A stretch of 64,000 nucleotides of DNA, taken from the IMG/VR virus record IMGVR_UViG_3300043446_004437, positions 62,001-126,000 of that record, one strand, 5' to 3'. Below the pieces are notes generated by a model. That model did no database searches and was not told the DNA's origin. It saw only the letters and a program-made list of their open reading frames with translations. Made by a program: the position numbers and the translations under genes. Positions 1 through 24,281 of the stretch are shown piece by piece. The number at the start of each line of letters is the position of its first letter. Positions within the stretch are counted from its first letter, which is position 1.

Positions 1-18
1 GTACCTCTCACCCTCTCG

Positions 19-441
19 GTGAAGTTCGACAGCCCCGCCGGCTTCACCCCGGGTGTCATCTACACCTTGTGGATGGACCCGAAGGCTGACGCTCAGGTGA
101 TCGCCGGTGCAACGGCTTTCATCGACGGGACCGCCAAGACCCGCGACGGTCAGGACTACCACCGTGCTTGCCGGCTCGCTGTGGCCAACGACATCTCGGA
201 CTTCGAGATGACCGCCATCAAGACCGACAAGTACACCTCGTTCGGTGTGGAGCGGACCTCGCAGAAGGCATCCATCTTCCTGAAGGAAGGTGCCATCGCA
301 CGCTGGGAGATCGGTGAATTGACGATCAGCCCGGAGACCGGCGACTTCGACGACCTCGACTTGTTCGTCGACACCAAGGGGATGGCTCTCTTGAGCGCAC
401 CCGCAGCCCCATCCATCGTGACCGAAGAAGACCCCTTCTAG
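19..441 (+). CDS. hypothetical protein with acidic C-terminal EEDPF tail
   Basis: 140-aa ORF, GTG start, C-ending codon bias, followed by a hairpin and T-run. Confidence 0.75.
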   Translation: MKFDSPAGFTPGVIYTLWMDPKADAQVIAGATAFIDGTAKTRDGQDYHRACRLAVANDISDFEMTAIKTDKYTSFGVERTSQKASIFLKEGAIARWEIGELTISPETGDFDDLDLFVDTKGMALLSAPAAPSIVTEEDPF

Positions 442-467
442 CGGGTTCGGTCACCCAACCGTTGTTC

Positions 468-525
468 AGCCAGGTCGGTGCATGTCCCCTACATGCATCG
501 ACTTGGTTGGACTTCTTTTTTTTTC
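468..525 (+). terminator. Rho-independent terminator
   Basis: agccaggtcggtgcatgt/acatgcatcgacttggtt stem followed by a T-run. Confidence 0.7.
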
Positions 526-567
526 TTACTTAGCCCCTAGTCTAATAATAATAGTATTATTGTTTAG

Positions 568-579
568 GGAATAAGTCGG
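568..579 (+). promoter_or_regulatory. GGAATAAGTCGG motif copy 1
   Basis: Identical 12-mer also at 1874 and 2942; variant at 9823; always intergenic or at a gene end, upstream of + strand genes. Confidence 0.55.
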
Positions 580-597
580 TATTTAAGGAGGCTTAAG

Positions 598-870
598 ATG
601 AGCATTGACACCAACATCCGTGCGTTTGATCTTTCGGACGCCGGCCAAGAAACAATCTGGGGCAGAAACCAGTGTCATCACTGCAAAAAGATCAATCACA
701 TCAAGTTGAACAAGGAACAGTTTGTTGCTTGGACAACTGGTGGTCTTTTGATTCAGGACGCTTTCCCCCAGTTGACCCCAGAAGAACGAGACCTCATTCT
801 CATGGGCTTTCACCCAGAATGCTGGAATGAAGTCTTCAAGAAACCCGAAAACAAAAAGGAACAAGCATGA
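598..870 (+). CDS. hypothetical phage protein (CxxC; LIQDAFPQL..EERD.I..G.HPECW)
   Basis: AAGGAGG RBS, 90-aa ORF. Confidence 0.85.
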   Translation: MSIDTNIRAFDLSDAGQETIWGRNQCHHCKKINHIKLNKEQFVAWTTGGLLIQDAFPQLTPEERDLILMGFHPECWNEVFKKPENKKEQA

Positions 871-1073
871 TGTACTACGCCTCAATTCTCGTGTACACTC
901 TTATCGTGTGTGCACTTTTCATTCGTTGGGTCTTAAAGAATAAGAAGCCAACGAACAACCCGTGTGCCGACAGACACCTTGCAATGTACTTCATGGATGA
1001 AAAATCACATGGCTTGTACTGCGGCAGATGCAACAAGATCATCGACGAAGAGTTCTACGGAACAGAGGAGTAA
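867..1073 (+). CDS. small membrane protein with Cys/His motif
   Basis: ATGA overlap, N-terminal hydrophobic helix, CxxC. Confidence 0.7.
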   Translation: MMYYASILVYTLIVCALFIRWVLKNKKPTNNPCADRHLAMYFMDEKSHGLYCGRCNKIIDEEFYGTEE

Positions 1074-1076
1074 AAC

Positions 1077-1325
1077 ATGTTGCGACACTGGATGATCACT
1101 TGGGGTTGTCACCCCCCGGAAGGTTTCGCACCTCGTTGCGAAGAGTTCACCCACGAAACACTGGGTACCACTTACCAGCACGTCAACTGCGTAGACTGCC
1201 TTCACCAGATCATTATCGATCTGACCAAGAAGCTCGACGCACAAACCCAAGCCACCTTGGACTGGAAATCCGAATTCGAAGAAATCAACTGGAAATCCAA
1301 ATTCGAAGAACTGAACAAGGAGTAA
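1077..1325 (+). CDS. hypothetical protein
   Basis: GAGGAG RBS, tightly packed with neighbours. Confidence 0.75.
   Translation: MLRHWMITWGCHPPEGFAPRCEEFTHETLGTTYQHVNCVDCLHQIIIDLTKKLDAQTQATLDWKSEFEEINWKSKFEELNKE
1263..1316 (+). repeat. 27-bp in-frame tandem duplication (WKSEFEEIN/WKSKFEELN)
   Basis: tggaaatccgaattcgaagaaatcaac / tggaaatccaaattcgaagaactgaac. Confidence 0.85.
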
Positions 1326-1328
1326 AAC

Positions 1329-1622
1329 ATGTCGTTCACAACCCGTATCCTTTTGGATACCTTCAAGCAAATTGGTGAAGCTACCTTTCGTGATGGCTTT
1401 ATCAACTTTGAAATTGGAGATGTAGTCCAAAACGGAGAAACTCATCTCAAAATGGCTCTGCGTGTTACGGTTCAGTACCAAATGACCGACAACACCAGTA
1501 CCTATGTCCAAATTTTCAAAGGCTCTAACAAGCACAAAAGAGCAGCCGAATGGCTGTTTCAGATGACTGAAGGTGAACTCGGTCCCAATAATATGGAGAC
1601 CTTCATCGAAAAGATCATCTAA
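1329..1622 (+). CDS. hypothetical protein
   Basis: AAGGAG RBS, 97 aa. Confidence 0.8.
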   Translation: MSFTTRILLDTFKQIGEATFRDGFINFEIGDVVQNGETHLKMALRVTVQYQMTDNTSTYVQIFKGSNKHKRAAEWLFQMTEGELGPNNMETFIEKII

Positions 1623-1873
1623 AAGATCTTGTGTAAGGTTTCGAATAGCCAGCCAATAGGTTGGAATTCCTATGTCGAATACCTTTTCACGAGAAATCCT
1701 AGTTATAACTAGGCGTGTAAATAATCATAGGACACGATCCAGTAAACAGGAAAAGCCTATGTACTGGTAGCCTGACACCAATGGATGTCGAATCAGGCTG
1801 GGTAGTCAACACCCAAAAACCCCTCGGTCTGCCCCACCGGGACAAAGTTGATAACGGGGCATTATAAACATTC

Positions 1874-1885
1874 GGAATAAGTCGG
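1874..1885 (+). promoter_or_regulatory. GGAATAAGTCGG motif copy 2
   Basis: Exact copy, 15 nt upstream of ATG 1901. Confidence 0.55.
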
Positions 1886-1900
1886 GAAAGGGAAAACACC

Positions 1901-2169
1901 ATGACAAACATTCAGAATATGGACAGTAGCGAACTGGTTTTGGAAGCCTTGAAGGGCTTGACCAGAATCACCGAAAAGCTCGGTAACATCATCGAAACAC
2001 ACCAAAGGCTTCTTCACATGATGAACGACCGAATCAATCAGCTCGAAAGGGGCGAATAATGAAGAAAATGATCATCAGTAATCTCATCAGCAATTTGATC
2101 TGGGTAGTGACAGTCACCATTGGTGTGGTTGGCGCTGCTCTTTTCATCGACTCAAAGGAGAACAAATAA
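1901..2169 (+). CDS. two small ORFs (1901-2059, 52 aa; 2059-2169, 36 aa hydrophobic)
   Basis: TAATG-coupled ORFs read by hand, below the ORF-track cutoff. Confidence 0.6.
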
Positions 2170-2471
2170 TGAGCATCATCACCGTACGCCAAGTCGACAT
2201 TGACACAGCACACGAGCAGGCATATGGTTTCAACGCGTGGTACACCGATGGACGCAGCCTTCCAAAGGGCATGTATTCATCGTTTGTGGCACACTACCAC
2301 GTTGCAACCGAAACCTGCTACATCGAGTTCAGCATCCAATCACCCACCGGTGATTCTTCCGACCATCACAACTTCGCATTCCCGTGTGCCAATTTCACGC
2401 AAGCAATGAACATCGTGGACATGCACTCGGCAATGATGCAAGCGTGGATCGTGGAGAACACACCCGTATGA
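2169..2471 (+). CDS. hypothetical protein
   Basis: AAGGAG RBS, TAATG coupling. Confidence 0.8.
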   Translation: MSIITVRQVDIDTAHEQAYGFNAWYTDGRSLPKGMYSSFVAHYHVATETCYIEFSIQSPTGDSSDHHNFAFPCANFTQAMNIVDMHSAMMQAWIVENTPV

Positions 2472-2638
2472 AAATCAAAATCATCGATGACGTACCGCGC
2501 AAAGGTTTGTGTGCCATGTGTCACAAAACCAAACTGACAGTAACCGTCGCAATATCTTCAAAGAACAGTCCAATAGTTACAACTGAAGACTGGTGCCTTG
2601 AAGACTTCCACAAGATACAAGATAGGACTCTACGATGA
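2468..2638 (+). CDS. small zinc-finger protein (CxxC...WC)
   Basis: ATGA overlap at 2468. Confidence 0.6.
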   Translation: MKIKIIDDVPRKGLCAMCHKTKLTVTVAISSKNSPIVTTEDWCLEDFHKIQDRTLR

Positions 2639-2744
2639 ATAAGATTCTAAAGAAAGTTGCGCTAGTCACCACAGCGATAGCATTTGTTGTCGCCGGCCTT
2701 GCACTATACGTCAAGAACATGACATTGTTCAAGAAGGAGAAATA

Positions 2745-2942
2745 ATGTTTAAAATACTTTTATTCCTCGCCGGCGTAATCTCTGGCTTAATAACTAACGC
2801 AGTAATAGTCCGCAAAAAGCGCACTGTGACAAACGACACACTCGATTTCCCAATGTGGGTAAACGATGCGTGCAATGATATTGAAACTAAATTCAATAAC
2901 ATTGTTGCACGTTACAACCACCCGACTTATCGAAACCAGTAG
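2745..2942 (+). CDS. small membrane-anchored protein
   Basis: AAGGAG RBS, N-terminal TM. Confidence 0.7.
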   Translation: MFKILLFLAGVISGLITNAVIVRKKRTVTNDTLDFPMWVNDACNDIETKFNNIVARYNHPTYRNQ

Positions 2943-2953
2943 GAATAAGTCGG
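2942..2953 (+). promoter_or_regulatory. GGAATAAGTCGG motif copy 3
   Basis: Exact copy. Confidence 0.55.
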
Positions 2954-3045
2954 CACATCTAGGGAAGGGGGTGACCGTTTGTTAGATTGGCTATTTGATT
3001 TAATTCATGACATTCTAGATTCACTATTCAACTAAGGAGAAAACT

Positions 3046-3222
3046 ATGTTAGGCAAGTTTCTTGGAAAAGTAACTGGCAAGTCAGTTGACATTGTTACTG
3101 CTACGCCAGAGTTTGTGAAGACAAACACAAAGGCAACCATGGAAGCATTGAAGAATGCTAAAAATGAGTTCGTCTCTGATTTCAAGACCGAGTTCAACAA
3201 GTCCGATTCAGAAGGACTGTAA
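3046..3222 (+). CDS. hypothetical protein (58 aa)
   Basis: TAAGGAG RBS; read by hand. Confidence 0.65.
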   Translation: MLGKFLGKVTGKSVDIVTATPEFVKTNTKATMEALKNAKNEFVSDFKTEFNKSDSEGL

Positions 3223-3300
3223 TAATACAAAGATTTGGGCTAGTCCCAAAGTAAGCAATATCCACAATACAATATCCATAAAATACACAAAGGAATAAAC

Positions 3301-4341
3301 ATGTCATTACTCGAAAAGTTCGGATACAAGAAGGACGAGTTCGCAATCGCTTTGGAGAACCCAGAGTTGTTTGCTTCCAACTCAACCACCACCAAGATCG
3401 TAGTTGGTAAGCCAACTCGGATTCCTGGTTCAATCAACGGAGTTGCGGTTCCAACCACAATTCTCGTCAAGAAGGCACAGTGGAGCCGCCTCACGGTTCG
3501 TGACCACATCGTTCGCCGCGCAGACGCAGAAGCACGCGTTTCGCAGGTGTTTGGTGGTGTGTTCAACAACCTTCAGGCAGACGTCACCCTCGAAATCGAC
3601 GGCACCGAAATGTCGTTGTACGATCTCATGAAGCAGTTCTGCATCGAATCGTACGGCAAGTCGTTGACCGACGACAAGATCGACCAGATGTTGAGCACCA
3701 ACTTGTCATTAAACGGCATCCGCAATGGTGGACCGCTCATGTTCCAGCAGATGGGTGCTAGCGTTGCTGGCATTGCACACGCTGTGGACGCATTCAAGTC
3801 GGCTGGTGCATTCGATGACATTCGTTCGGTTGGATCCAGCAAGTCCTTCACCACAGCATACAAGATGCCTGATGGTAGCGGACTTGACGTGGTTTCCTTC
3901 GAGCTTGGTACCTCGGATCGTAACCTGTCCAAGACTGGTCAGGGCTTCATTGACATCGTCAGTGCAGTGACCGAGAACTTCGAGCGTGTCAAGAACCACA
4001 AGTCTGTGGCCAAGGTGCTGCAGGACAAGTTGGACGCTGGCATTGGTTCGATGAGTCAGGAAGACATCAAGAAGGCACAAGGGGAAATCAAGATTGAGCT
4101 TGACATGGCCAAGGACTACGCAAACTGCTGGTCTGGTGCTGCTCGTCAAACCAAGATTGACAACGGTCGCAAGATTGTTGAGAACAAGTACAACGCATCC
4201 AACGCACCATGTGGTCGCTGGTCTGCCGTTGTAAACGGTACGGTTGTGGACTTCGATGTCTGGTCAAACTCGACCAAGAGCGCAGTCAACACCACAGAAC
4301 AGGAACTGAGCAGCATCGCAACTGCTGTCGACCCGTTCTGA
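3301..4341 (+). CDS. hypothetical protein with C-terminal DPF tail
   Basis: 346 aa, strong C-ending codon bias, AAGGA RBS. Confidence 0.9.
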   Translation: MSLLEKFGYKKDEFAIALENPELFASNSTTTKIVVGKPTRIPGSINGVAVPTTILVKKAQWSRLTVRDHIVRRADAEARVSQVFGGVFNNLQADVTLEIDGTEMSLYDLMKQFCIESYGKSLTDDKIDQMLSTNLSLNGIRNGGPLMFQQMGASVAGIAHAVDAFKSAGAFDDIRSVGSSKSFTTAYKMPDGSGLDVVSFELGTSDRNLSKTGQGFIDIVSAVTENFERVKNHKSVAKVLQDKLDAGIGSMSQEDIKKAQGEIKIELDMAKDYANCWSGAARQTKIDNGRKIVENKYNASNAPCGRWSAVVNGTVVDFDVWSNSTKSAVNTTEQELSSIATAVDPF

Positions 4342-4352
4342 ACCAAGTTTAG

Positions 4353-4385
4353 TGGGGTTGGTCTGATGATCGCAGGCCAACCCCT
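4353..4385 (+). terminator. GC hairpin, probable terminator
   Basis: ggggttggtct...aggccaacccc. Confidence 0.55.
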
Positions 4386-4420
4386 CTAATAATAAAAATA
4401 CTCAAACGAAGGAGCAAGAC

Positions 4421-4705
4421 ATGTACACAATTGCACTTGTCGTTCTGCTTGGTTTGGTATCCGCAACTGTGACTCAGATTGTATTGGACATTGTTCCAGC
4501 AATCAAAAAGATCCCTGTTGTTGGAGACCCAATCAGACTCTACGCTATTGTGGCTATCCTTATCGTATGGCTCACTGACACATCAGTGTTAAGAACCTTC
4601 GGTATTGGTGCCACAGAACAGTGGATTGATGTAGTGGGCTCAGGTTTGGCAATTGCAGGCGCATCTGCAATCGTTGACGCTGTAGTCAATTACCTCGATA
4701 AATAA
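4421..4705 (+). CDS. three-TM membrane protein (holin-like topology)
   Basis: AAGGAG RBS, three hydrophobic segments. Confidence 0.7.
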   Translation: MYTIALVVLLGLVSATVTQIVLDIVPAIKKIPVVGDPIRLYAIVAILIVWLTDTSVLRTFGIGATEQWIDVVGSGLAIAGASAIVDAVVNYLDK

Positions 4706-4824
4706 AACTAAATTTAGTGGGTAGTAGACGAGCATATCCCCGATTATATGCTGCAAACCAACCGTTTGCTACCCACTATTTAGTTTATTATAAAAAAATT
4801 TTTATTAATTCAAAAAGGAATAAC

Positions 4825-5076
4825 ATGTCATCACCACTTGAAATGTTTGAAATACTGCAATGGATGAAAGACGCCGGCTGCAAAGGAAATACAGAAGCAA
4901 ACTTCTTTCCAGAAAGCGGCTACACCAAAGAATCACAACTTGCATACGAAATCTGTTCACGATGCAATGTTAAAACTGAATGTTTAAACTATGCTGTTGA
5001 TCGTCCCGAACTTCTTGGTATTTGGGGTGGCACATCACACAGACAACGCCGACACATCCGTATGGGAAGGAAATAA
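4825..5076 (+). CDS. whiB: WhiB-family Fe-S transcription factor #1
   Basis: W..A.C...FFP...C..C.V..EC and GIWGG. Confidence 0.93.
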   Translation: MSSPLEMFEILQWMKDAGCKGNTEANFFPESGYTKESQLAYEICSRCNVKTECLNYAVDRPELLGIWGGTSHRQRRHIRMGRK

Positions 5077-5077
5077 A

Positions 5078-5455
5078 GTGAATGAATATCCAGACAATTA
5101 TCCTCGCCACGGTTTTCACATCTGTCATGGGTGTGGCTCTATGGCTCCGCATCATACTCATAAAAACCTTCCAAATAATGGATGGACATTTAATATCAAT
5201 AACTTCGGATACTACAGTGGATTCACCGACCAAATCGACGAAGGACCAATAAACATCAGAATGTGTCATGAATGTGTAAATAAATTCCTTGAAACATTTC
5301 CACTATTAAGTATGTTTGTTCCCCGTGGATCACACCCAATGTGGGGACCCAGCGAAAAACCATGCTGCAAATATGCTTGGAAACAAGAAAATATTGGAAA
5401 TGCATCCTTTATTTATATGCCCACCGAAGACGGCGAAAAATGGGAAATTCAGTGA
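5078..5455 (+). CDS. Cys/His-rich hypothetical protein
   Basis: GTG start inferred, two CxxC motifs. Confidence 0.7.
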   Translation: MNEYPDNYPRHGFHICHGCGSMAPHHTHKNLPNNGWTFNINNFGYYSGFTDQIDEGPINIRMCHECVNKFLETFPLLSMFVPRGSHPMWGPSEKPCCKYAWKQENIGNASFIYMPTEDGEKWEIQ

Positions 5456-5468
5456 AAGGAGTCACACA

Positions 5469-5636
5469 ATGTGGCTATGTGATTACTGCGGCAAAGAATT
5501 AGAAGAACCCATAGTAGCATGCGACACCTGCTACGCAAAACCAAAAATAAAGAAAAACATACTTCTAAAGCATCAAGAACACCAAATAGCTATTATGTTG
5601 AAACACATCAAAAAACCACGCACAGGACACTCATAA
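5469..5636 (+). CDS. small zinc-ribbon protein
   Basis: CxxC...CxxC, AAGGAG RBS. Confidence 0.65.
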   Translation: MWLCDYCGKELEEPIVACDTCYAKPKIKKNILLKHQEHQIAIMLKHIKKPRTGHS

Positions 5637-5677
5637 CCATTATGACTATCTCCTATAACACCATCATACCAACTTTA

Positions 5678-5708
<31 letters not shown>

Positions 5709-5873
5709 CGAAGCGAGCCCCCCTACCCCCTAGTAGACTTCCGTAAGGAAGCTTCTAAAAAAATTCGAGTAGTCCTCAGGACGCCGAGAAAAAAAGAAGT
5801 ACAAATGTTGCAAGCGAGTACACGAGTCTGCTATACTGATATCCTAGGAAATAAACACATAAGGAGATTATGT

Positions 5874-6089
5874 ATGCCTCGGCAGCATCAATCTAAAGCA
5901 GTCCGGAAAGTTCTCGCAGAACTAACCAGACTAGGCTTTAACGTTGAACAAAAAAAATCAGGTGTCTATCGGATCACTCCACCTCCAGGTGTAGACGGTC
6001 CAATGTATACGACACATGGCACGGAATCAGCATTGCACCCAATGCGCCGTGACTTTAAAAAATATTATAACATAGATATCAACGTTTAA
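5874..6089 (+). CDS. HicA-like small protein
   Basis: helix-LGF.V..KKSG.Y.I pattern resembling the HicA dsRBD-like fold; AAGGAG RBS. Confidence 0.45.
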   Translation: MPRQHQSKAVRKVLAELTRLGFNVEQKKSGVYRITPPPGVDGPMYTTHGTESALHPMRRDFKKYYNIDINV

Positions 6090-9923: not shown

Positions 9924-12557
9924 ATGAACATGCCAACATTCAAGCCAGCTTTACGCTTGCACACAATGCACAACGGTCCGTTGCGCAGCATTAACGATTA
10001 TCAATTTGGGTTCTATGATGTAGGCTTTGCTCGCCAAGCACTACAATATCTTAACTCTGTTGAAGATGTTGAGAACCCAATCTTTAAGATGGCTACCATG
10101 CCAATTCCAACCAGCAAGGCTGAAGCAAAGATTGCAGAAGCCTACATTCGGAACCCAAACATCTGCTATTCTGTAGTAGACAAAAACAAAATTGTTCTCG
10201 TACAGATTAAAGGCAACGACGGTTGGCTTGATGTGTACAAGAAGCTTGGTTATGAAATTCTCAGCGGTGACAAAACAGCAAAGCGTTTGAAGACTTTTCA
10301 TCGCGCAGCTTTGCTCAACGCACATTTCGAAAAGCATGAAATCAATGTTAAGATTGTTAATTCAGACGAATATTCATCTTGGTCATATGAAGATCCATCT
10401 GTAGTTGAATGGATTCGCAATGAATATCCTAACGTAGATGTTACAGATCCTAAAGTCATTGAGCGTTTGCTTGACGGTGGTTTCGTAATTTCTCGCAAAT
10501 TCATTCAGCGAGCAGTAGAGAACCTTCCTGTTTACGAACCACACAAAACGCTCGACACAAAAGAATATTATTATGACTGGCGTGTCCGCAAAAACTTCAT
10601 TAAAGATATGATGGAATGTTCAATCTTCAATACTCGTATTGTATTTGAACTTGGCTTTCTTAAAGGCAATGCCATCGTATCAGACAACATGCCAGAAGGC
10701 ATAGACGTCATCACTAGTCGAGCCAACATCAAGAACGAAATCAAGTATCACAATGGTTTCAAGTTTCTTGCAGAACCAGTTGGCTCATATGAATCAGTTC
10801 TTACTGACACTCAAACTGTAATCAATTTGCCAAAATTGTTTCCGCTCAACGATCTTGAATACTGGCTTGATGAAGAGTACAAAAAGATCTTTGATCTTGC
10901 CACATCCGACAAACTTTTGACCAACTGGCGTGCAGTTTACAAGCGTCAGTTTCGCAAAATACATGAGGCGGAAGACGAAGAAGCTTATGCTCGCATGAAC
11001 TATGTCGGTTACCGTTGGCGTAAGTTGGGCATGAAAATTACTGATTCGCCATGGCTCTTTGAAACTTTGGCAATCAGTCATGCCCGACCCTTTGCCGACT
11101 CTTCCAAGCCTCGTATCCCAATTCCATGCGCAATTAGCGAGCAGGTTATTCCTGAGTCGCTTTCTCGCATGGCAGGCTATGACGTAGAAGTAGACATGGG
11201 CAAGATCCGCCGCATCGAAGAACTTGGAGTGCACGTCGTTAGCGACCTTGACTGGCTCGAGATGTATGAATCTCATGGCGGTCATGACGAGGACGACTAC
11301 TTCAAGCTGTTCTATCGCACCATGCGTGGTGGAGAATATGATGGCAAGAAAGTTGTCATCATATGTCGTTCTCCAAATGATCTTGGCGAGTATTCAATCT
11401 TTGAATACACTGAAGGTGACTGGTATCCAACTTGGACTAACTCTCAAGGTATTCCTTTAGAGTTTCCAGAAGTAAACGGACGGGATTGGCCTAAGCGTTT
11501 GAGCAAAGCCATCTATGATGGCGATATCTCATATGCTGGTCTCCCATCCAAATCTTTGCCCAAAAAGAAGTTTGAACCAGCACCGTATTCTCCAGACGAT
11601 GTTATTCGAGACATGAACATTGCAATGGCCGGCGGTCAAATCGGTGGATATGTAAATGCTTGCATGCTGCATTCATCTGTTATTCACCGCCACCGACCAG
11701 TGCAGCTGTGTACTTTGGAGACTGCTCTCGACAAATGCATCAACCCAGACTCTGTCGAAGATGTAATCGCAATTGATGCAGAAGCTCGATCCATCGTACG
11801 CCAAATCATTCAGTCTAAAACTCCGATTGACCAATTTGTTTGGTCAACTCGTGGTTCTTCTAGACTGCTCGAAGCAGATGATGAACTCATCCTTGATGAC
11901 AATGGCAAGCTTACAATGATTTCTAAACTTTGTTACGACAAGTTTGCTGAGCACTGTGCGCGTGTTCGTGAATGGTCGCAGGCTAATGCCCGCCCATCTG
12001 ACGAACGCATCGCACAACTTGGTAACAGTCAACTGCAAATGTTTTATCACGCCCTGCCCATTGTCAACCAATTCCGCTCAGGTATTTGGTCTATCAATAC
12101 ATCTGAAGCAACTGCAGAAAATGGCAACATTGTTCGTAACTCATGGGAATATCTCTATTCAAAGCAAGTTGACATCATCAACTCGTTTGAACTTGAATCA
12201 GATCGTCATGACTTTGTACTTGCATTGTATCAAGTCTGCTTGACTGTTCCAACCAAAGGTGGCAAAATCACGGATCATTATATGATGAACCGTTTTGTTT
12301 ATCCTTATTTGGAAGCAGCATTGCAGTATTATGGCATTGGCCGATCTGTCAGCTTCTTTTCCGATGAAGAAGGTGAAGTAAAGATTGTTGAATCCATTGT
12401 TACCGAATGGAAGTTTACCGATCCAGATGGTAACACTACAATCTTTAACGATCCCGTTGAGTTTCAACAAGCTCAATCCATTTATTCTAAAGTTGAATTT
12501 GTTACAAATTCTGCTTCGTTACTTCCAAACGAAACTCGTTTAACTTCAAAATACTAA
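9924..12557 (+). CDS. putative single-subunit two-barrel (YonO/cellular RdRP-like) RNA polymerase
   Basis: LLDGGFVIS, R..G.LKG.A.V...ANIK, GGHDEDD (DxDGD-like) and CRSP motifs. Confidence 0.65.
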   Translation: MNMPTFKPALRLHTMHNGPLRSINDYQFGFYDVGFARQALQYLNSVEDVENPIFKMATMPIPTSKAEAKIAEAYIRNPNICYSVVDKNKIVLVQIKGNDGWLDVYKKLGYEILSGDKTAKRLKTFHRAALLNAHFEKHEINVKIVNSDEYSSWSYEDPSVVEWIRNEYPNVDVTDPKVIERLLDGGFVISRKFIQRAVENLPVYEPHKTLDTKEYYYDWRVRKNFIKDMMECSIFNTRIVFELGFLKGNAIVSDNMPEGIDVITSRANIKNEIKYHNGFKFLAEPVGSYESVLTDTQTVINLPKLFPLNDLEYWLDEEYKKIFDLATSDKLLTNWRAVYKRQFRKIHEAEDEEAYARMNYVGYRWRKLGMKITDSPWLFETLAISHARPFADSSKPRIPIPCAISEQVIPESLSRMAGYDVEVDMGKIRRIEELGVHVVSDLDWLEMYESHGGHDEDDYFKLFYRTMRGGEYDGKKVVIICRSPNDLGEYSIFEYTEGDWYPTWTNSQGIPLEFPEVNGRDWPKRLSKAIYDGDISYAGLPSKSLPKKKFEPAPYSPDDVIRDMNIAMAGGQIGGYVNACMLHSSVIHRHRPVQLCTLETALDKCINPDSVEDVIAIDAEARSIVRQIIQSKTPIDQFVWSTRGSSRLLEADDELILDDNGKLTMISKLCYDKFAEHCARVREWSQANARPSDERIAQLGNSQLQMFYHALPIVNQFRSGIWSINTSEATAENGNIVRNSWEYLYSKQVDIINSFELESDRHDFVLALYQVCLTVPTKGGKITDHYMMNRFVYPYLEAALQYYGIGRSVSFFSDEEGEVKIVESIVTEWKFTDPDGNTTIFNDPVEFQQAQSIYSKVEFVTNSASLLPNETRLTSKY

Positions 12558-13599: not shown

Positions 13600-15279
13600 A
13601 TGACTTTAACTTTGCGTCCTTATCAAAAAGAAGCACTTGAAGCAATACAAACAAACATTGATAAAGGTATTGTTAAGCAGCTCGTTGTGCTTCCAACAGG
13701 CGCAGGTAAAACTGTAATTTTTAGTAATATTCCTCAGACTATAAAAGATAGTCTACCAATGCTCGTATTGGCACATCGTGGAGAATTACTCAACCAGGCC
13801 AAAGATAAAATTCTTTGGTCTAATCCTCAACTCGATGTTCAAATAGAAAAAGCTGAAGACACAGCTGATTTATGTGATGTTGTTGTTGCATCAGTACCCA
13901 CACTGGGTAGAGCTGATTCTCAAAGAATATTAAAATATCCTAAAGATTATTTTAAAACTATTATTATTGATGAAGCACACCATGCTGCAGCAGAAACTTA
14001 TCGAAGAATAGTAGATTACTTTACTCCTAACTTTTTATTGGGAGTAACTGCTACTCCACAAAGATCTGATTCTGTAAGATTGACTGATGTATTTCAGGAA
14101 ATAACATACTATAAAACAATACAAGATTTAATACAAGAAGGATACTTGTGTAGACTTGTTGGTTATAGAATCACAACAGAAACAGATATTTCGGAAGTGG
14201 AGACATCACATGGCGACTACATGGCGTCCCAATTGGAAGATGCTATTAACAATACTGCTCGTAACACTTTGGTTGTTAAATCGTATCTTGAGTTTGCTCA
14301 AGACAAAAAAGCAGTCGTATTTGCATCCGGAATCAAACATGCAGCAGACTTGGCCGCATCCTTTGCGAAAAAGCAAATACCTGTACGAGTAATACTTGGT
14401 GATACACCAGATGATGAGAGAGCCCAGACTTTAACTGATTTTGCTTCTGGCAAAATAAAAGTCATAGTTAACGTAGGTGTTCTTACAGAAGGTTTTGACG
14501 AACCATCAATAGGCGCAATTATACTTGCTCGACCTACACGATCAACATTATTGTATACCCAAATTGTTGGTCGTGGCACGCGTCTATATAAAGGCAAAGA
14601 ACATTGTATTATTATAGACATAGCCGATACTACAAAAGGCAAGAAACCTTTAGGCTTACCAACACTCTTAGGTATGCCACCTGAATTTGATCTTAAAGGT
14701 GGAGACCTTGTTGATATAGCTGAAAAGTATAAAGAACTAGAAGACTATTGTCCTGGTGAAGCTATTCGTGTTCTATCTTTAGAAGACATAGAATTAGCTT
14801 ACAAACGCATAGATCTATTTATGCCACCACCACCTAATGAAGTAGTGCAGACATATTCTAGATTTGTTTGGGCAGAAGTAGCCGAAAATGATTTTCATTT
14901 AGGCGTCAACGAAAACGAATCTCTAAGAATACATATTGATGCACTTGGTAGATGGACTACCACTTTAAAGCAAAGATCTTCTACCGGATCTATTGACACC
15001 ATTCTTGGTCATCCTGAAGACATGCGCGAAGCGTTCGTTAGAACTGACCGATGGATAGTTAATCATAGATCCCATAACTTGAATCTTATTGATAACACCG
15101 CTGCTTGGAGATCTGATGCTCCAACAGACAAACAACAAAAAATGTTAAAAAGAATAGGTGTTCCTGTAACGTCAGACATGACTAAAGGAACAGCTAGCCA
15201 AATTATATCTAAATATTATGAAGCTAATCCTAAACCTAAATGGTTACAAAATAAAATAGCTTCAAAAAAATGGAGTTAA
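13600..15279 (+). CDS. superfamily 2 DEAD/DEAH-like (Irc3/SSL2-type) helicase
   Basis: LRPYQ, PTGAGKT, IIDEAHH, TAT, LTEGFD, QIVGRGTR. Confidence 0.95.
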   Translation: MTLTLRPYQKEALEAIQTNIDKGIVKQLVVLPTGAGKTVIFSNIPQTIKDSLPMLVLAHRGELLNQAKDKILWSNPQLDVQIEKAEDTADLCDVVVASVPTLGRADSQRILKYPKDYFKTIIIDEAHHAAAETYRRIVDYFTPNFLLGVTATPQRSDSVRLTDVFQEITYYKTIQDLIQEGYLCRLVGYRITTETDISEVETSHGDYMASQLEDAINNTARNTLVVKSYLEFAQDKKAVVFASGIKHAADLAASFAKKQIPVRVILGDTPDDERAQTLTDFASGKIKVIVNVGVLTEGFDEPSIGAIILARPTRSTLLYTQIVGRGTRLYKGKEHCIIIDIADTTKGKKPLGLPTLLGMPPEFDLKGGDLVDIAEKYKELEDYCPGEAIRVLSLEDIELAYKRIDLFMPPPPNEVVQTYSRFVWAEVAENDFHLGVNENESLRIHIDALGRWTTTLKQRSSTGSIDTILGHPEDMREAFVRTDRWIVNHRSHNLNLIDNTAAWRSDAPTDKQQKMLKRIGVPVTSDMTKGTASQIISKYYEANPKPKWLQNKIASKKWS

Positions 15280-16018: not shown

Positions 16019-16105
16019 GCCCAGGTGGCGGAATTGGTAGACGCAAGGGGCTTAAACCCCCTCGCTATGTGAAATAGCGTACGGGTTCGATTCCCGTCTT
16101 GGGCA
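16019..16105 (+). tRNA. trnL: tRNA-Leu(TAA)
   Basis: GCCCAGG/CTTGGGC acceptor, AGGGG-CTTAAAC-CCCCT arm, long variable arm. Confidence 0.95.
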
Positions 16106-16122
16106 CAATACAAAGGATTTTT

Positions 16123-17568
16123 ATGCGGAATAAAAATTTTGTATACAAGTTTCTGTTATCAGCAACTCTGTTGTCAGCATTACTTGTTAACACAAAAAAT
16201 ACTACAGTTCTAGCTGGAGATGTTGCACCTGCAACTACTACAGTAAAGTTCTACAGAAAGACAACTAATGTTGTTCTTCCAGCTTTAGGAACTGTTGGAC
16301 CAAAAATTGGTATTGATACAGCATACAACAATAACTATCGAGGCCAAGACACTTACATTGTTTTGTTAGATACTGGCATAGAATCATCTCATCCATTTTT
16401 TGGTGGAAGAGTTGCACTTGAAGCATGCTTTACCGCAAGATGCCCTAATGGACAGACTTCTATGGTTGGACCAGGAGCTGCTGCACCTGTTCACTGGCAT
16501 GGTACTCATACTGCAGGAATTGCAGCTGGTGCTAATTCTTCTATTCGTGGAATTGCACCCAGTGCAAAAATTATTGCAGTCAACGTATTTGCATTAGACG
16601 GTTCCGCATCAGATGCCGATTTAATTAGAGCATTACAATGGGTTGATTCAATATCTAACGATTATAATATTGTTGCAGTCAACATGTCTTTAGGCACACC
16701 TGGAACATTTAGATCATCATGCAATTCTTATATTCCTGATCTTACTGCAATTATCTCAACGCTAAAGTCCAAAAATATTGCAACCGTTGTATCTGCTGGC
16801 AACGAAGGCCAAGTTGGCATGAGTTCACCAGCATGTATTACAGATACTGTCAGTGTTGCAGCAACATACTTTTTGGCCGATGGTAGTGACAGAGTTACAA
16901 GCTTTAGTAACGTAAATGAATTGACAGATTTATCTGCTCCAGGATACAACATTGTATCTTCTAAACTCATGGGCTCATATGGTTCCTCTTCAGGAACTTC
17001 AATGTCTGCCCCAATGGTTGCTGGAGCTTTTGCAGTCTATCGTTCTAAGTTTGGCTCACAGCCAGTTGATAAAGTTGTTTCTGATTTTCAATCTACCGGC
17101 ATAAATGCTAAAGATGATTATAGTGGAATTGTTACAAAAAGAATAGATTTTAAATCTATGTTTGCTGGCGGTGGTACAACACCAACACCAACTACCACAA
17201 TTCCAGTCACAACAACAACTGTACCTGGTTCAACAACAACCACTACCGTTCCTTCTGATGAAGATGACGAATCAGAAGATTATTTGAATATTCCTTATAT
17301 TATATCATTAAAGAAATATTCAACAAGATTGTCATATATCCAACTTGATTTTACTTATCGATACACTAACATACCTGTATCTAAATTTATTTTAAGATGC
17401 AGATATACAGATGGTAAAATAGTTGATAAGACAATACCCAACAGAAATAGAACAACTAATTTTTATTTAGTTTCTATTTCTTCTGTTAATATTCGCTCAT
17501 GTAGAATGGCCGCTGTTTCCACTTCTGAAACAATAGGTACATTTTCAAAATATATATTGGTAAAATAA
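16123..17568 (+). CDS. secreted S8 (subtilisin-like) serine peptidase with Thr-rich linker
   Basis: LLDTG, HGTHTAG and GTSMSAP catalytic triad; signal peptide. Confidence 0.95.
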   Translation: MRNKNFVYKFLLSATLLSALLVNTKNTTVLAGDVAPATTTVKFYRKTTNVVLPALGTVGPKIGIDTAYNNNYRGQDTYIVLLDTGIESSHPFFGGRVALEACFTARCPNGQTSMVGPGAAAPVHWHGTHTAGIAAGANSSIRGIAPSAKIIAVNVFALDGSASDADLIRALQWVDSISNDYNIVAVNMSLGTPGTFRSSCNSYIPDLTAIISTLKSKNIATVVSAGNEGQVGMSSPACITDTVSVAATYFLADGSDRVTSFSNVNELTDLSAPGYNIVSSKLMGSYGSSSGTSMSAPMVAGAFAVYRSKFGSQPVDKVVSDFQSTGINAKDDYSGIVTKRIDFKSMFAGGGTTPTPTTTIPVTTTTVPGSTTTTTVPSDEDDESEDYLNIPYIISLKKYSTRLSYIQLDFTYRYTNIPVSKFILRCRYTDGKIVDKTIPNRNRTTNFYLVSISSVNIRSCRMAAVSTSETIGTFSKYILVK

Positions 17569-17650: not shown

Positions 17651-17965
17651 ATGCATTGGTTTGATTCTGCATTATGCAAGGGGTTAACACATATCTTTTT
17701 TGCAAAAGATTCTGAAAGACCACAAGCTACAATAAAGCGCGAGGCAATAGCTCAAAGCGTTTGTAACCAATGTGAAGTTTTTGAACAATGCAGAACATAT
17801 GCTAGAACTCACGGTGAAATAGGATATTGGGCCGGCGAAAATGAATATGATAGATATCTTTTGGGCTTTATGCCCAAAGGTGGTTTTGGTCCAATTACCA
17901 GATCCGTTAGTGCTTACGCAAAAAGAAAACAACAATTACTTAAAAAGGAAATAACAACATCATGA
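17651..17965 (+). CDS. whiB: WhiB-family protein #2
   Basis: W...ALC...FF...C..C.V..QC and GYWAG. Confidence 0.9.
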   Translation: MHWFDSALCKGLTHIFFAKDSERPQATIKREAIAQSVCNQCEVFEQCRTYARTHGEIGYWAGENEYDRYLLGFMPKGGFGPITRSVSAYAKRKQQLLKKEITTS

Positions 17966-23954: not shown

Positions 23955-24281
23955 ATGTTCATTCAACGCAAGCCTTGGATGCAGGAAGCATCATGTGTTG
24001 AGCAAAGTTTAGATATATTTTTCCCCAACAGATATACAGAAAACACCGTTTCTAAACCATTTTCTGTATGTGAACAGTGTTCTGTTAGATGCGAATGTTT
24101 ATACGAAGCTATGACAACTGAATCTGTTGGCATATGGGCGAAAACAACAGACTATCAAAGATCAGTTATCATGTCTAGATTTTTTAATGATAACCCAAAA
24201 AATATTAACATTGACACAATATTCCAGATCGTTGAAAACAATAATTATTCTATACCAATTTCATTAAAATACGATCAATAA
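23955..24281 (+). CDS. whiB: WhiB-family protein #3
   Basis: WMQEASC...FFP...C..C.V..EC and GIWA. Confidence 0.9.
   Translation: MFIQRKPWMQEASCVEQSLDIFFPNRYTENTVSKPFSVCEQCSVRCECLYEAMTTESVGIWAKTTDYQRSVIMSRFFNDNPKNINIDTIFQIVENNNYSIPISLKYDQ

What the first reader, a model, noticed from the sequence alone, without database searches (positions are those of the whole stretch)
9924..12557. Divergent single-subunit two-barrel RNA polymerase with a DxDD catalytic loop
Seen: DGGFVIS, then R..G.LKG.A.V...I...ANIK, matching the DG.G.IS and R..KG...S..K pattern of RdRP/YonO-like enzymes. Later comes GGHDEDD, followed rather than preceded by R-S-P. Established: two-barrel polymerases use DxDGD, with the RxP motif normally upstream of it. 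Inference: an unusual or permuted catalytic barrel in an 877-aa phage RNAP, an atypical feature for actinobacterial phages as far as I know.
Basis: partly seen in the sequence, partly recalled or inferred. Interest (0 to 1): 0.75.

Follow-up and report, generated by a model that had tools for sequence, protein, structure and literature searches.

The report
Rewired two-barrel phage RNA polymerase
This gene of a 216-kb freshwater phage encodes an undescribed kind of RNA polymerase: it has the fold of the RNA-silencing polymerases of eukaryotes, but its metal-binding loop is one residue short (DxDD, not DxDGD) and comes before, not after, a second catalytic motif, so sequence searches and motif filters miss the whole family.

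Summary
ORF 9924-12557 (+) encodes 877 aa with DGGFVIS, GFLKGN...NIK, GGHDEDD and, 24 residues later, R-S-P-N. No sequence library recognises it (Pfam, PHROGs, PDB; hhalign against YonO, P23-45 gp64 and the 0305phi8-36 gp99 family). The AlphaFold2 model (pLDDT 91) matches only two-barrel RNA polymerases: maize RDR2 (Z 12), QDE-1, P74-26 gp62 / gp64-type RNAP, P23-45 gp96 and phi14:2 gp66.

All 243 collected family members carry D-x-D-D. R482 and P484 are invariant, as are K247 and (nearly) K270, D184 and R238, which match the active-site residues of QDE-1.

A paralogue 10 kb upstream (1119 aa, hhalign E 1.8e-32) has the canonical DQDGD at the same position. It too is followed, not preceded, by R-S-P-N. 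So DxDD is the catalytic loop minus its glycine, and the inverted motif order is a trait of the superfamily.

Six roughly 200-kb genomes each carry two paralogues. Three WhiB genes point to an actinobacterial host.

Most likely it is a phage DNA-dependent RNA polymerase with a rewired catalytic barrel. I inferred the rewiring; I could not inspect model coordinates. I rate it a new variant of a known kind.

The parts
9924..12557 (+). Gene for the 877-aa single-subunit two-barrel polymerase (P0001), the DxDD subfamily ('lineage A').
   Evidence: ORF and translation. AF2 model with pLDDT 91 and pTM 0.90. Fold matches to RDR2, QDE-1, the gp64-type RNAP (8f72) / P74-26 gp62, P23-45 gp96 and phi14:2 gp66.
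10272..10286 (+). K117-T-A-K120-R121 on helix 118-126, just before the first barrel. Inferred counterpart of the QDE-1 'DPBB1 auxiliary helix', which binds the product strand.
   Evidence: K120 is invariant, R121 97% and K117 92% conserved. The paralogue family has K400, K403 and R404 in the same place. The role is taken from QDE-1 (PMC9508822) and is an inference.
10317..10778 (+). First double-psi barrel (beta-like, DPBB-A), residues 132-285.
   Evidence: VIA alignments of stand-alone DPBB proteins (FwdD 5t61_D and 8rja_D, p97/Cdc48 N-domains, Pa4485) all fall on model residues 132-285.
10473..10493 (+). D184-G185-G-F-V-I-S. D184 is the inferred fourth catalytic carboxylate (QDE-1 D709, metal B through water).
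   Evidence: D184 is 97% conserved and G185 invariant. The same D-G is invariant in the gp99/YonO alignment (D229 G230) and in the paralogue family (D449 G450).
10629..10733 (+). N236-x-R238 ... K247-G248 ... K270: the basic residues of the beta-like barrel that hold the RNA 3' end and the NTP phosphates.
   Evidence: K247 is invariant, K270 99% and R238 89% conserved. The pattern and spacing resemble QDE-1 Q736, R738, K743 and K767 (PMC9508822) and gp99-family R293, K298, G299 and K349.
11115..11543 (+). Second barrel (beta-prime-like, DPBB-B), residues about 398-540. Strands: S1 403-410, S2 427-431, S3 436-439, helix 441-451, S4 459-468, S5 476-482, S6 490-495.
   Evidence: Secondary structure comes from the two models. 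The domain model's best VIA matches are the DPBB regions of RNAP largest subunits, but at low Z (2.5-3.6). Small complete DPBBs align to residues 402-467.
11277..11297 (+). G452-G-H-D455-E-D457-D458: the Mg-binding Asp loop, lacking the canonical glycine.
   Evidence: It is invariant in 243 of 243 sequences. It aligns to H-D-T-W-D710-Q-D712-G-D714 of the paralogue. MAFFT places a one-residue gap in DxDD-type members relative to DxDGD-type members. A helix precedes it and a strand follows, as in canonical enzymes.
11367..11378 (+). R482-S-P484-N: inferred Pro-gate (RxP) loop, lying after the Asp loop in the sequence.
   Evidence: R482 and P484 are invariant here, and R761 and P763 are invariant in the paralogue family. 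QDE-1 has R962-S-P964 in this role (PMC9508822). Covariation links H451-S491 and G453-E489.
11640..11732 (+). Helix 573-586 (G574, N578) and E599...D603: candidate bridge helix and trigger-loop-region acidic residue.
   Evidence: G574 is 99%, N578 87%, E599 88% and D603 99% conserved. The assignment is by position and by analogy with the gp99-family 'IDFAKTG' motif (I681, D682). It is an inference only.
13600..15279 (+). SF2 helicase/ATPase (ResIII + Helicase_C), a conserved downstream neighbour of the polymerase gene.
   Evidence: Pfam. It lies within 2 kb downstream of the polymerase gene in at least 27 of 45 related viral contigs, at 67-92% identity in the hits listed.
4861..5055 (+). WhiB-family gene 1 of 3. 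The others are at 17657-17857 and 23976-24164.
   Evidence: PF02467 matches above the curated cut-off: E 1.3e-19, 1.2e-11 and 8.1e-12. Among the 14 control genomes only Corynebacterium matched.

Best explanation
The gene encodes a catalytically competent single-subunit two-barrel nucleotide polymerase of the QDE-1/RDR/YonO structural class. Most likely it is a DNA-dependent RNA polymerase that transcribes part of this jumbo actinophage's genome independently of the host enzyme.

The active site is assembled as in other two-barrel enzymes. The first barrel supplies D184, R238, K247 and K270. The second supplies the carboxylate triad D455/D457/D458 and the Pro-gate R482-x-P484.

Two things differ. 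(1) The Mg loop is DxDD, the canonical DxDGD without its glycine. (2) The Asp loop comes 24 residues BEFORE the RxP loop, not about 45 residues after it.

My reading is that the strand after the Asp loop (S4, equivalent to beta6) and the strand that ends in RxP (S5, equivalent to beta3) form a simple hairpin. In a canonical double-psi barrel beta3 and beta6 are antiparallel neighbours, so this hairpin would recreate the normal geometry with a different chain path (order beta1 beta2 beta5 alpha2 beta6 beta3 beta4).

Shown: the fold, the invariant residues, the homology of the Asp loop to a DxDGD loop, and the inverted order throughout the superfamily. Inferred: the 3D equivalence of S4/S5 to beta6/beta3, the DNA template, and the role in the infection cycle.
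For: Fold. Foldseek against PDB finds QDE-1 at E 4e-8, RDR2 at 6e-8 and a phage gp64 RNAP (8f72) at 1e-4, with nothing else below 0.5. VIA gives RDR2 Z 12, QDE-1 9.1-9.8, 8f72 9.2, gp62 8.6, gp96 7.0 and gp66 6.6. AFDB clusters are almost all eukaryotic RdRPs. In BFVD the nearest are a family member (TM 0.92), a paralogue type, phage 'RdRPs' and P23-45 gp64. Language-model neighbours include PF05183 clusters.

Residues. The invariant set is given. It is the same constellation that is invariant in the gp99/YonO alignment: D-G, R, K-G, K, Q, RxP, DxDGD. These residues have experimentally assigned roles in QDE-1 (PMC9508822).

Asp loop identity. hhalign of the family against the 1119-aa paralogue gives probability 99.9%, E 1.8e-32 over 564 columns, with D455 and D457 on D710 and D712. 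In the paralogue-family search set, 61 of 65 sequences (the paralogue plus 64 hits) have DxDGD. Complete small DPBBs and the tobacco PEP chain 8w9z_C (residues 386-508) align to residues 402-467 at rmsd 2.1-2.8, which puts S4 at the barrel's last strand.

Inverted order. RxPN is invariant downstream in both subfamilies, while the upstream R397 is not conserved.

Geometry. The DPBB strand order beta3-beta1'-beta2-beta2'-beta1-beta3' (PMC11258233) makes beta3 and beta6 neighbours. Covariation (240 sequences, Meff 165) ranks S5-S6, S2-S6, S4-S5 and S2-S3 as the top four of 15 strand pairs, as this wiring predicts. It also links H451-S491 and G453-E489.

Biology. The genome is a 216-kb myovirus-like phage with no Pfam-recognisable RNAP. 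The terminase's nearest relatives include the 0305phi8-36 group, whose gp99 is a canonical RdRP-like RNAP. Every characterised phage member of this structural class is a DNA-dependent RNAP (PMC5467207, PMC10770324).
Against: No sequence-level similarity to any known polymerase family was found: Pfam at E<=1, PDB profile searches, and hhalign against gp64, YonO, gp99 and the gp99 family. Membership therefore rests on a predicted structure plus motif logic.

The second barrel on its own gets only weak matches: Z <= 3.6, and Foldseek finds nothing significant. I could not inspect coordinates, so distances between D455/457/458, R482, K247 and K270 were not measured.

The strand-pair covariation is weak for S1-S3 and S1-S4 (0.54-0.55), no better than some pairs predicted not to be adjacent.

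The best structural matches are RNA-dependent enzymes, so template preference is open. No RNA data, promoter motif or activity data exist.
Confidence: 0.72

Rival explanations
1. The barrel has the ordinary chain order. On this view the upstream K-P-R397-I-P399-I-P is the true RxP (56 residues before the Asp loop, within the usual 20-100), and R482-S-P-N is a lineage-specific extra motif in an appended beta element. There would then be no rewiring, only a glycine-less Asp loop.
For: The local pattern beta-hairpin, helix, GG-Asp loop, strand (residues 427-468) is canonical. P399 and P401 are 74% and 88% conserved.
Against: R397 is under 70% conserved and aligns to a non-basic residue in the paralogue family, where only a Pro/Trp is kept. 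VIA places S1, which follows this motif, at the FIRST strand of gp62, beta-prime and designed DPBBs, not after beta3. No beta strands lie upstream (residues 296-391 are helical) to supply a first half-barrel. R482 and P484 are invariant in both subfamilies, and their flank covaries with the flank of the Asp loop.
Confidence: 0.18
2. It is an RNA-templated or primer-synthesising enzyme rather than the phage's transcriptase. It could make dsRNA or small RNAs, or act as a replicative primase for the phage DnaE/DnaB replisome.
For: The closest structures are eukaryotic RNA-dependent RNA polymerases. QDE-1 itself uses both DNA and RNA templates (PMC9508822). In the ORFs I scanned I saw DnaE and DnaB-like proteins but did not look for a primase.
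Against: Every phage enzyme of this structural class that has been characterised (YonO, P23-45 gp64 and gp96, phi14:2 gp66) transcribes DNA (PMC5467207, PMC10770324, 10.1101/2020.03.07.982082). There are two or three paralogues per genome, as in phages with virion and non-virion RNAPs. The genome has no other recognisable RNAP.
Confidence: 0.12
3. It is an inactive relic of a polymerase, kept for a structural or regulatory role. On this view the shortened DxDD loop cannot bind the catalytic metals.
For: Neither my two literature searches nor the published viral two-barrel RNAP survey, which filtered on DxDxD, turned up a DxDD enzyme. The paralogue with DxDGD could be the active one.
Against: All three Asp, the GG before them, RxP, both Lys, the barrel-A Asp and the Arg are invariant or nearly so across 243 sequences down to about 18% identity. 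Three complete genomes carry only DxDD-type copies (G007, G008, G009).
Confidence: 0.05

Closest known systems
Eukaryotic cellular RdRPs: Neurospora QDE-1 and plant RDR2 (Pfam PF05183)
   Same: These are the best structural matches over about 580-600 residues. Both are a single chain with a beta-like barrel first and a beta-prime-like barrel second. The active-site inventory is the same: D of 'DG', Q/N-x-R, K-G, K, R-S-P, and an Asp triad preceded by GG.
   Different: No detectable sequence similarity. The Asp loop is DxDD, not DxDGD. The Asp loop precedes RxP instead of following it by about 43 residues. It is a phage protein of 877 aa, and I found no head domain that I could align.
YonO of Bacillus prophage SPbeta and gp99 of jumbo phage 0305phi8-36 (phage RdRP-like DNA-dependent RNAPs)
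   Same: All are phage-encoded single-subunit two-barrel enzymes. The 0305phi8-36 group is among the nearest terminase relatives of this phage. They share the motifs D-G, R...K-G and K.
   Different: YonO and gp99 have the canonical order and signature: RSPH...DNDGD and FRSPL...GGADTDGD. The gp99-family proteins match PF05183; this family does not. hhalign between the two family profiles finds nothing.
Thermus phage P23-45 gp64 / P74-26 gp62 (non-virion RNAP) and gp96 (tape-measure-fused virion RNAP)
   Same: Fold matches at Z 8.6-9.2 and 7.0. Both phages carry paralogous two-barrel RNAPs in one genome. Both enzyme sets are too divergent to find by sequence.
   Different: gp64 has R288-R-P290 followed by DYDGD at 326-330, the canonical order. 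It is shorter (616 aa). There is no sequence similarity.
crAss-like phage phi14:2 gp66 virion RNAP
   Same: A two-barrel single-chain phage RNAP found by motif plus structure; fold match at Z 6.6.
   Different: gp66 is a 2,180-aa virion protein with a DFDxD signature (10.1101/2020.03.07.982082). P0001 is 877 aa and has DxDD.
Split multisubunit RNAPs of phiKZ/AR9-type jumbo phages
   Same: Jumbo-phage context. The DPBB-B domain model weakly matches the phiKZ and AR9 nvRNAP beta-prime-like chains.
   Different: No Pfam Rpb1 or Rpb2 domains occur anywhere in the genome. Both barrels are in one chain. The nearest folds are RdRP-type, not beta/beta-prime-type.

Membership tests
Two-barrel (double-psi beta-barrel) polymerase superfamily | Two DPBB domains forming one catalytic cleft | tested here: met
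   The whole-model matches are exclusively two-barrel RNAPs. Barrel A (residues 132-285) is matched independently by stand-alone DPBBs. Barrel B (about 398-540) matches the DPBB regions of RNAP largest subunits, at low Z.
Two-barrel (double-psi beta-barrel) polymerase superfamily | Literal DxDxD signature in the beta-prime-like barrel | tested here: not met
   P0001 and all 243 family members have D-x-D-D. The paralogous subfamily has DxDGD at the aligned position.
Two-barrel (double-psi beta-barrel) polymerase superfamily | Three invariant carboxylates in the loop between the second helix and the last strand of the beta-prime-like barrel | tested here: met
   D455, D457 and D458 are invariant. 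The helix 441-451, loop, strand 459-468 context is seen in both models. S4 aligns to the last strand of complete DPBBs. Metal binding itself was not tested.
Two-barrel (double-psi beta-barrel) polymerase superfamily | [RK]xP Pro-gate loop 20-100 residues upstream of the Asp triad (the filter used in PMC10770324, Supplementary Data 4) | tested here: not met
   The invariant R482-x-P484 lies 24 residues DOWNSTREAM of D458, and 47 residues downstream in the paralogue. The upstream R397-x-P399 is not conserved.
Two-barrel (double-psi beta-barrel) polymerase superfamily | Two conserved basic residues in the beta-like barrel | tested here: met
   K247 is invariant and K270 99% conserved, with R238 at 89%.
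Two-barrel (double-psi beta-barrel) polymerase superfamily | Template-dependent, Mg-dependent nucleotide polymerisation | not testable with these tools
   This needs purified protein. The complex-prediction job with Mg and GTP was not folded.
Pfam PF05183 RdRP (QDE-1, RDR, YonO, gp99) | Match to the family HMM or profile | tested here: not met
   No Pfam hit at E<=1. hhalign of the family against a 28-sequence gp99/YonO alignment gives probability 0.4%. All 48 gp99 homologues carry PF05183.
Pfam PF05183 RdRP (QDE-1, RDR, YonO, gp99) | Overall fold and domain order (N-terminal domain, DPBB1, connector helices, DPBB2, bridge helix, C-terminal region) | tested here: met
   About 570-600 residues align to RDR2 and QDE-1. 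AFDB cluster hits are RdRPs at E 1e-10 to 1e-6.
Multisubunit-type jumbo-phage RNAP (phiKZ-like) | Separate beta- and beta-prime-like polypeptides recognisable by Rpb1/Rpb2 profiles | tested here: not met
   PF00623 and PF00562 are absent from the whole genome, while all 14 control genomes matched.
T7-like single-subunit RNAP | PF00940 right-hand polymerase domain | tested here: inconclusive
   There was no match in the genome, but the control search matched nowhere either. The fold of P0001 is in any case two-barrel, not right-hand.

The most novel reading that the evidence does not exclude
The catalytic barrel of this superfamily is topologically rewired. The chain runs beta1, beta2, beta5, alpha2, Asp loop, beta6, then a hairpin straight into beta3, RxP, beta4. 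Only one of the two psi-loops survives, yet the canonical active-site geometry is kept. That would be the first catalytic double-psi barrel with non-canonical connectivity in any cellular or viral polymerase, combined with a glycine-less Mg loop. Further, these freshwater actinophages may run a three-polymerase system: two full-length paralogues plus a split, highly diverged copy in the virion-gene block that could be an injected RNAP.
Probability: 0.4. Interest if true: 0.85.

Novelty: new variant of a known kind. Interest (0 to 1): 0.72.

Why it matters
Two-barrel polymerases are the oldest and most conserved transcription enzymes, and DxDGD preceded by RxP is treated as their universal signature. 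The published survey of viral two-barrel RNAPs filters explicitly on '[RK]xP x{20,100} DxDxD' (PMC10770324, Supplementary Data 4). That filter would discard this superfamily twice over, for its order and for its signature.

Here are at least 300 proteins from about 200-kb freshwater phages in which the order is inverted. In four-fifths of them the glycine of the Mg loop is missing as well, while every catalytic residue stays invariant.

If the proteins are active, three things follow. The catalytic barrel tolerates rewiring of its chain and shortening of its metal loop. A natural DxDD/DxDGD paralogue pair becomes available to test what the glycine does. And probable actinobacterial phages, not previously reported to encode such enzymes, gain host-independent transcription.

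It also warns that motif-based censuses of viral RNAPs undercount them.

Tried and rejected
Sequence recognition failed everywhere. Pfam and PHROGs gave nothing useful (one PHROG of unknown function at E 0.05). PDB searches by phmmer and by profile failed. tblastn against 50,697 phage records found nothing. hhalign of the family against gp64, YonO, gp99 and a 28-sequence gp99/YonO alignment also failed.

The complex-prediction job (protein + 2 Mg + GTP), meant to locate the metal and NTP site, was not folded.

Foldseek with the second-barrel domain model alone gave no significant match. Only VIA gave weak, though consistent, RNAP hits.

I first doubted the actinobacterial host because G+C is 30-45% and the nearest terminases come from Firmicutes phages. 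I withdrew the doubt after finding three WhiB genes.

A 9-mer enrichment scan of upstream regions found no phage promoter motif. No RNA run was listed.

The search for related loci with the broad alignment failed because no stretch was conserved enough; a narrower alignment worked.

The ESM Atlas was uninformative for the putative split pair.

I considered a simple circular permutation of the barrel. It does not fit the order of secondary-structure elements, because only one strand separates the Asp-loop strand from RxP.

I also considered that 'IYDGD' at 531-535 is the true catalytic loop. I rejected this because only the glycine and partly one Asp are conserved there, whereas DxDD is invariant.
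Full report
WHAT IS THERE. The window is bases 62,001-126,000 of a 216,024-bp IMG/VR virus record that CheckV rates complete. The genome encodes a tail sheath, a large terminase, DnaE, a DnaB-like helicase and a class II ribonucleotide reductase, so it is a jumbo tailed phage. The gene is held by freshwater, lake and aquaculture metagenomes.

Three WhiB-family genes lie in the window, at 4861-5055, 17657-17857 and 23976-24164. All score above Pfam's cut-off, and among the 14 control genomes only Corynebacterium matched. Freshwater whiB-encoding actinophages with several whiB copies are known (PMC10914622).

THE OBSERVATION. ORF 9924-12557 (+) encodes 877 aa.

I collected 194 homologues from 5.8 billion clustered proteins and 263 representatives from 1.8 billion. 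All are unnamed metagenomic or viral proteins. In a 76-sequence alignment reaching down to about 18% identity, the invariant columns are K120, G185, K247, G452, D455, D457, D458, R482 and P484. D184, K270, R121, Q297, G574 and D603 are at least 96% conserved. D-x-D-D occurs in 243 of 243 sequences. This is not a chance pattern.

WHAT IT IS. No sequence method recognises the protein. The AlphaFold2 model built on the family alignment is confident: pLDDT 91, pTM 0.90.

- Foldseek against the PDB returns only QDE-1, plant RDR2 and a phage gp64 RNAP (8f72) below E 1e-3.
- The Foldseek-independent VIA search of 48,161 chains ranks RDR2 (Z 12), QDE-1 (9.1) and P74-26 gp62 (8.6) first. P23-45 gp96 and phi14:2 gp66 follow at 7.0 and 6.6. 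A second look confirms these hits, with 570-600 residues aligned to RDR2 and QDE-1.
- AlphaFold-DB cluster hits are eukaryotic RdRPs.
- BFVD returns a family member, a paralogue type, phage 'RdRPs' and P23-45 gp64.
- Stand-alone double-psi barrels (FwdD, p97/Cdc48 N-domain, Pa4485) align to residues 132-285, which defines the first barrel.

THE ACTIVE SITE. The experimentally defined residues of QDE-1 are these (PMC9508822):
- D709, Q736, R738, K743 and K767 in barrel 1;
- the cis-proline 'Pro-gate' R962-S-P964;
- D1007, D1009 and D1011 in barrel 2.

The same set is invariant in my alignment of 0305phi8-36 gp99 relatives plus YonO: D229-G230, R293, K298-G299, K349, Q388, R529-x-P531 and D573-x-D575-G-D577. 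P0001 has all of them: D184-G185, N236-x-R238, K247-G248, K270, Q297, R482-S-P484 and D455/D457/D458. Two features differ: the Asp loop is DxDD, and it comes before RxP.

THE PARALOGUE SETTLES WHAT THE DxDD LOOP IS. A regex and BLAST scan of the whole genome found a 1119-aa ORF at genome 58,348-61,707 (+). It ends 293 bases before the window starts and about 10 kb upstream of P0001.
- hhalign of the P0001 family against it gives probability 99.9%, E 1.8e-32 over 564 columns. H451-G-G-H-D455-E-D457-D458-Y lies on H-D-T-W-D710-Q-D712-G-D714.
- Of the 65 sequences in its family search set (the paralogue plus 64 hits), 61 have 'HDTWD[QS]DGD'. R761-S-P763-N follows 47 residues DOWNSTREAM; in the 20-sequence alignment D710, D712, G713, D714, R761 and P763 are invariant.
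- MAFFT puts a one-residue gap in DxDD-type members relative to DxDGD.

So DxDD is the canonical Mg loop without its glycine, and Asp-loop-then-RxP is a property of the whole superfamily. The upstream R397-I-P399 of P0001 is poorly conserved and is not basic in the paralogue. In 312 superfamily sequences, 251 are DxDD and 61 DxDGD. The DxDGD sequences form one clade (support 1.0). Its position depends on an unknown root, because no outgroup can be aligned.

HOW THE BARREL MAY BE WIRED (INFERENCE). The elements of the second barrel are S1 403-410, a short helix, S2 427-431, S3 436-439, helix 441-451, the Asp loop, S4 459-468, S5 476-482, RxPN and S6 490-495.

A domain model (residues 368-560, pLDDT 93) was searched on its own.
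- Its best VIA matches are the DPBB regions of RNAP largest subunits (ASFV, vaccinia, Pol I-IV, M. tuberculosis beta-prime, phiKZ and AR9 nvRNAPs, QDE-1, gp96, gp62). Z is only 2.5-3.6.
- Complete small DPBBs and the tobacco PEP chain 8w9z_C (residues 386-508) align to residues 402-467 at rmsd 2.1-2.8.

So S1 corresponds to the first strand and S4 to the last strand (beta6), with the Asp loop in its canonical helix-loop-strand place. No strands exist upstream of S1.

In a double-psi barrel the strand order is beta3-beta1'-beta2-beta2'-beta1-beta3' (PMC11258233). Beta3, which ends in RxP, and beta6, which begins after the Asp loop, are therefore antiparallel neighbours. The S4-S5 hairpin reproduces exactly that geometry: the Asp loop starts S4 and RxP ends S5.

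The wiring that satisfies every adjacency is S1=beta1, S2=beta2, S3=beta5, S4=beta6, S5=beta3, S6=beta4. This is a segment transposition, not a circular permutation.

A mean-field covariation analysis (240 sequences, Meff 165) was run after I had formulated this wiring.
- It ranks S5-S6, S2-S6, S4-S5 and S2-S3 as the four strongest of the 15 strand pairs, and all four are predicted neighbours.
- S1-S4 and S1-S3 are weak.
- H451-S491 and G453-E489 link the flanks of the two catalytic loops.

I had no access to model coordinates, so the wiring is plausible but unproven.

BIOLOGY. The genome has no Pfam-recognisable multisubunit RNAP. The T7-type search was uninformative, because its control matched nowhere. 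The terminase's nearest relatives are Moorella phage MTATph1 and the Bacillus 0305phi8-36 group. That group's gp99 is a canonical PF05183-type RNAP.

Six complete or nearly complete genomes of about 200 kb each carry two full-length paralogues. One is always P0001-type. The second is DxDGD-type in G000, G001 and G006, and DxDD-type in G007, G008 and G009.

Phages with paralogous two-barrel RNAPs, such as P23-45, divide the early and later transcription programmes between them (PMC10770324). The same division of labour is the most economical guess here, with the three WhiB proteins perhaps acting on the host enzyme. This is inference; no expression data exist.

VERDICT. The protein founds, or belongs to, an undescribed superfamily of phage two-barrel polymerases, defined by an inverted Asp-loop/Pro-gate order and, in most members, a glycine-less DxDD metal loop. 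Two literature searches for such an enzyme found nothing. I rate it a new variant of a known kind, with interest 0.72.

Noticed in passing
L005:4348-7707 (+), which is genome 58,348-61,707 and ends 293 bases before window position 1: This is a 1119-aa paralogue of the polymerase with the canonical DQDGD (710-714) followed by R761-S-P-N. Its core is about 860-890 aa. The 230-residue N-terminal extension is absent from relatives in G001-G003 and has no Pfam match.
   Followed up: yes
L009:15893-17875 (-) and L009:13039-15855 (-), which are genome 193,893-195,875 and 191,039-193,855: These are two adjacent genes (660 aa and 938 aa) among giant ORFs of the structural block. The 660-aa protein matches the N-terminal half of the family HMM (E 1.7e-6, third-ranked after the two paralogues). 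The 938-aa protein opens with GGFDLDD at residues 23-29 and has R-Q-P-S about 25 residues later. Together they may be a split, highly diverged third polymerase, perhaps a virion enzyme. The 938-aa match is not significant on its own.
   Followed up: partly
window 4861-5055, 17657-17857, 23976-24164 (+): Three WhiB-family (PF02467) genes lie in the same plus-strand block as the polymerase. This points to an actinobacterial host and possibly to manipulation of the host sigma/RNAP.
   Followed up: partly
window 13600-15279 (+): An SF2 helicase (ResIII + Helicase_C) lies within 2 kb downstream of the polymerase gene in at least 27 of 45 related contigs. It is more conserved than the polymerase itself (67-92% identity against 43-88%). 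It may be a transcription-coupled ATPase.
   Followed up: partly
window 11511-11528 (P0001 residues 530-535, 'AIYDGD'): A partly conserved [RK]-D-G-[DETS] motif follows helix 526-531. It lies 48 residues after RxP, just where a canonical DxDGD would sit. It could be a vestige of an ancestral loop or a coincidence.
   Followed up: partly
window 7076-43847: Seven tRNA genes (Arg-tct, Leu-taa, Asn, Lys, Met, Thr, Gly) are scattered through the plus-strand block.
   Followed up: no
genome 162,128-202,453 (L008-L010), outside the window: ORFs of 3817, 2193, 2046 and 1436 aa have no Pfam match at all.
   Followed up: no
window 1-6000 compared with the rest: G+C is 44-49% in the first 6 kb and 43.5% over the polymerase gene, but 30-38% in most of the window.
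   Followed up: no
L047 and L057 (IMGVR_UViG_3300042868_009074, 267,766 bp): The polymerase gene occurs twice on this contig, about 208 kb apart. This suggests the contig is a concatemer, or an over-assembly of a genome of about 208 kb.
   Followed up: no
window 16099-17568, 28014-29744, 30875-32479, 60388-63003: These ORFs encode a subtilase (S8), a JAB-domain protein, an AAA+ ATPase, and two glycosyltransferases (GT17-like and GT2) on the minus strand.
   Followed up: no
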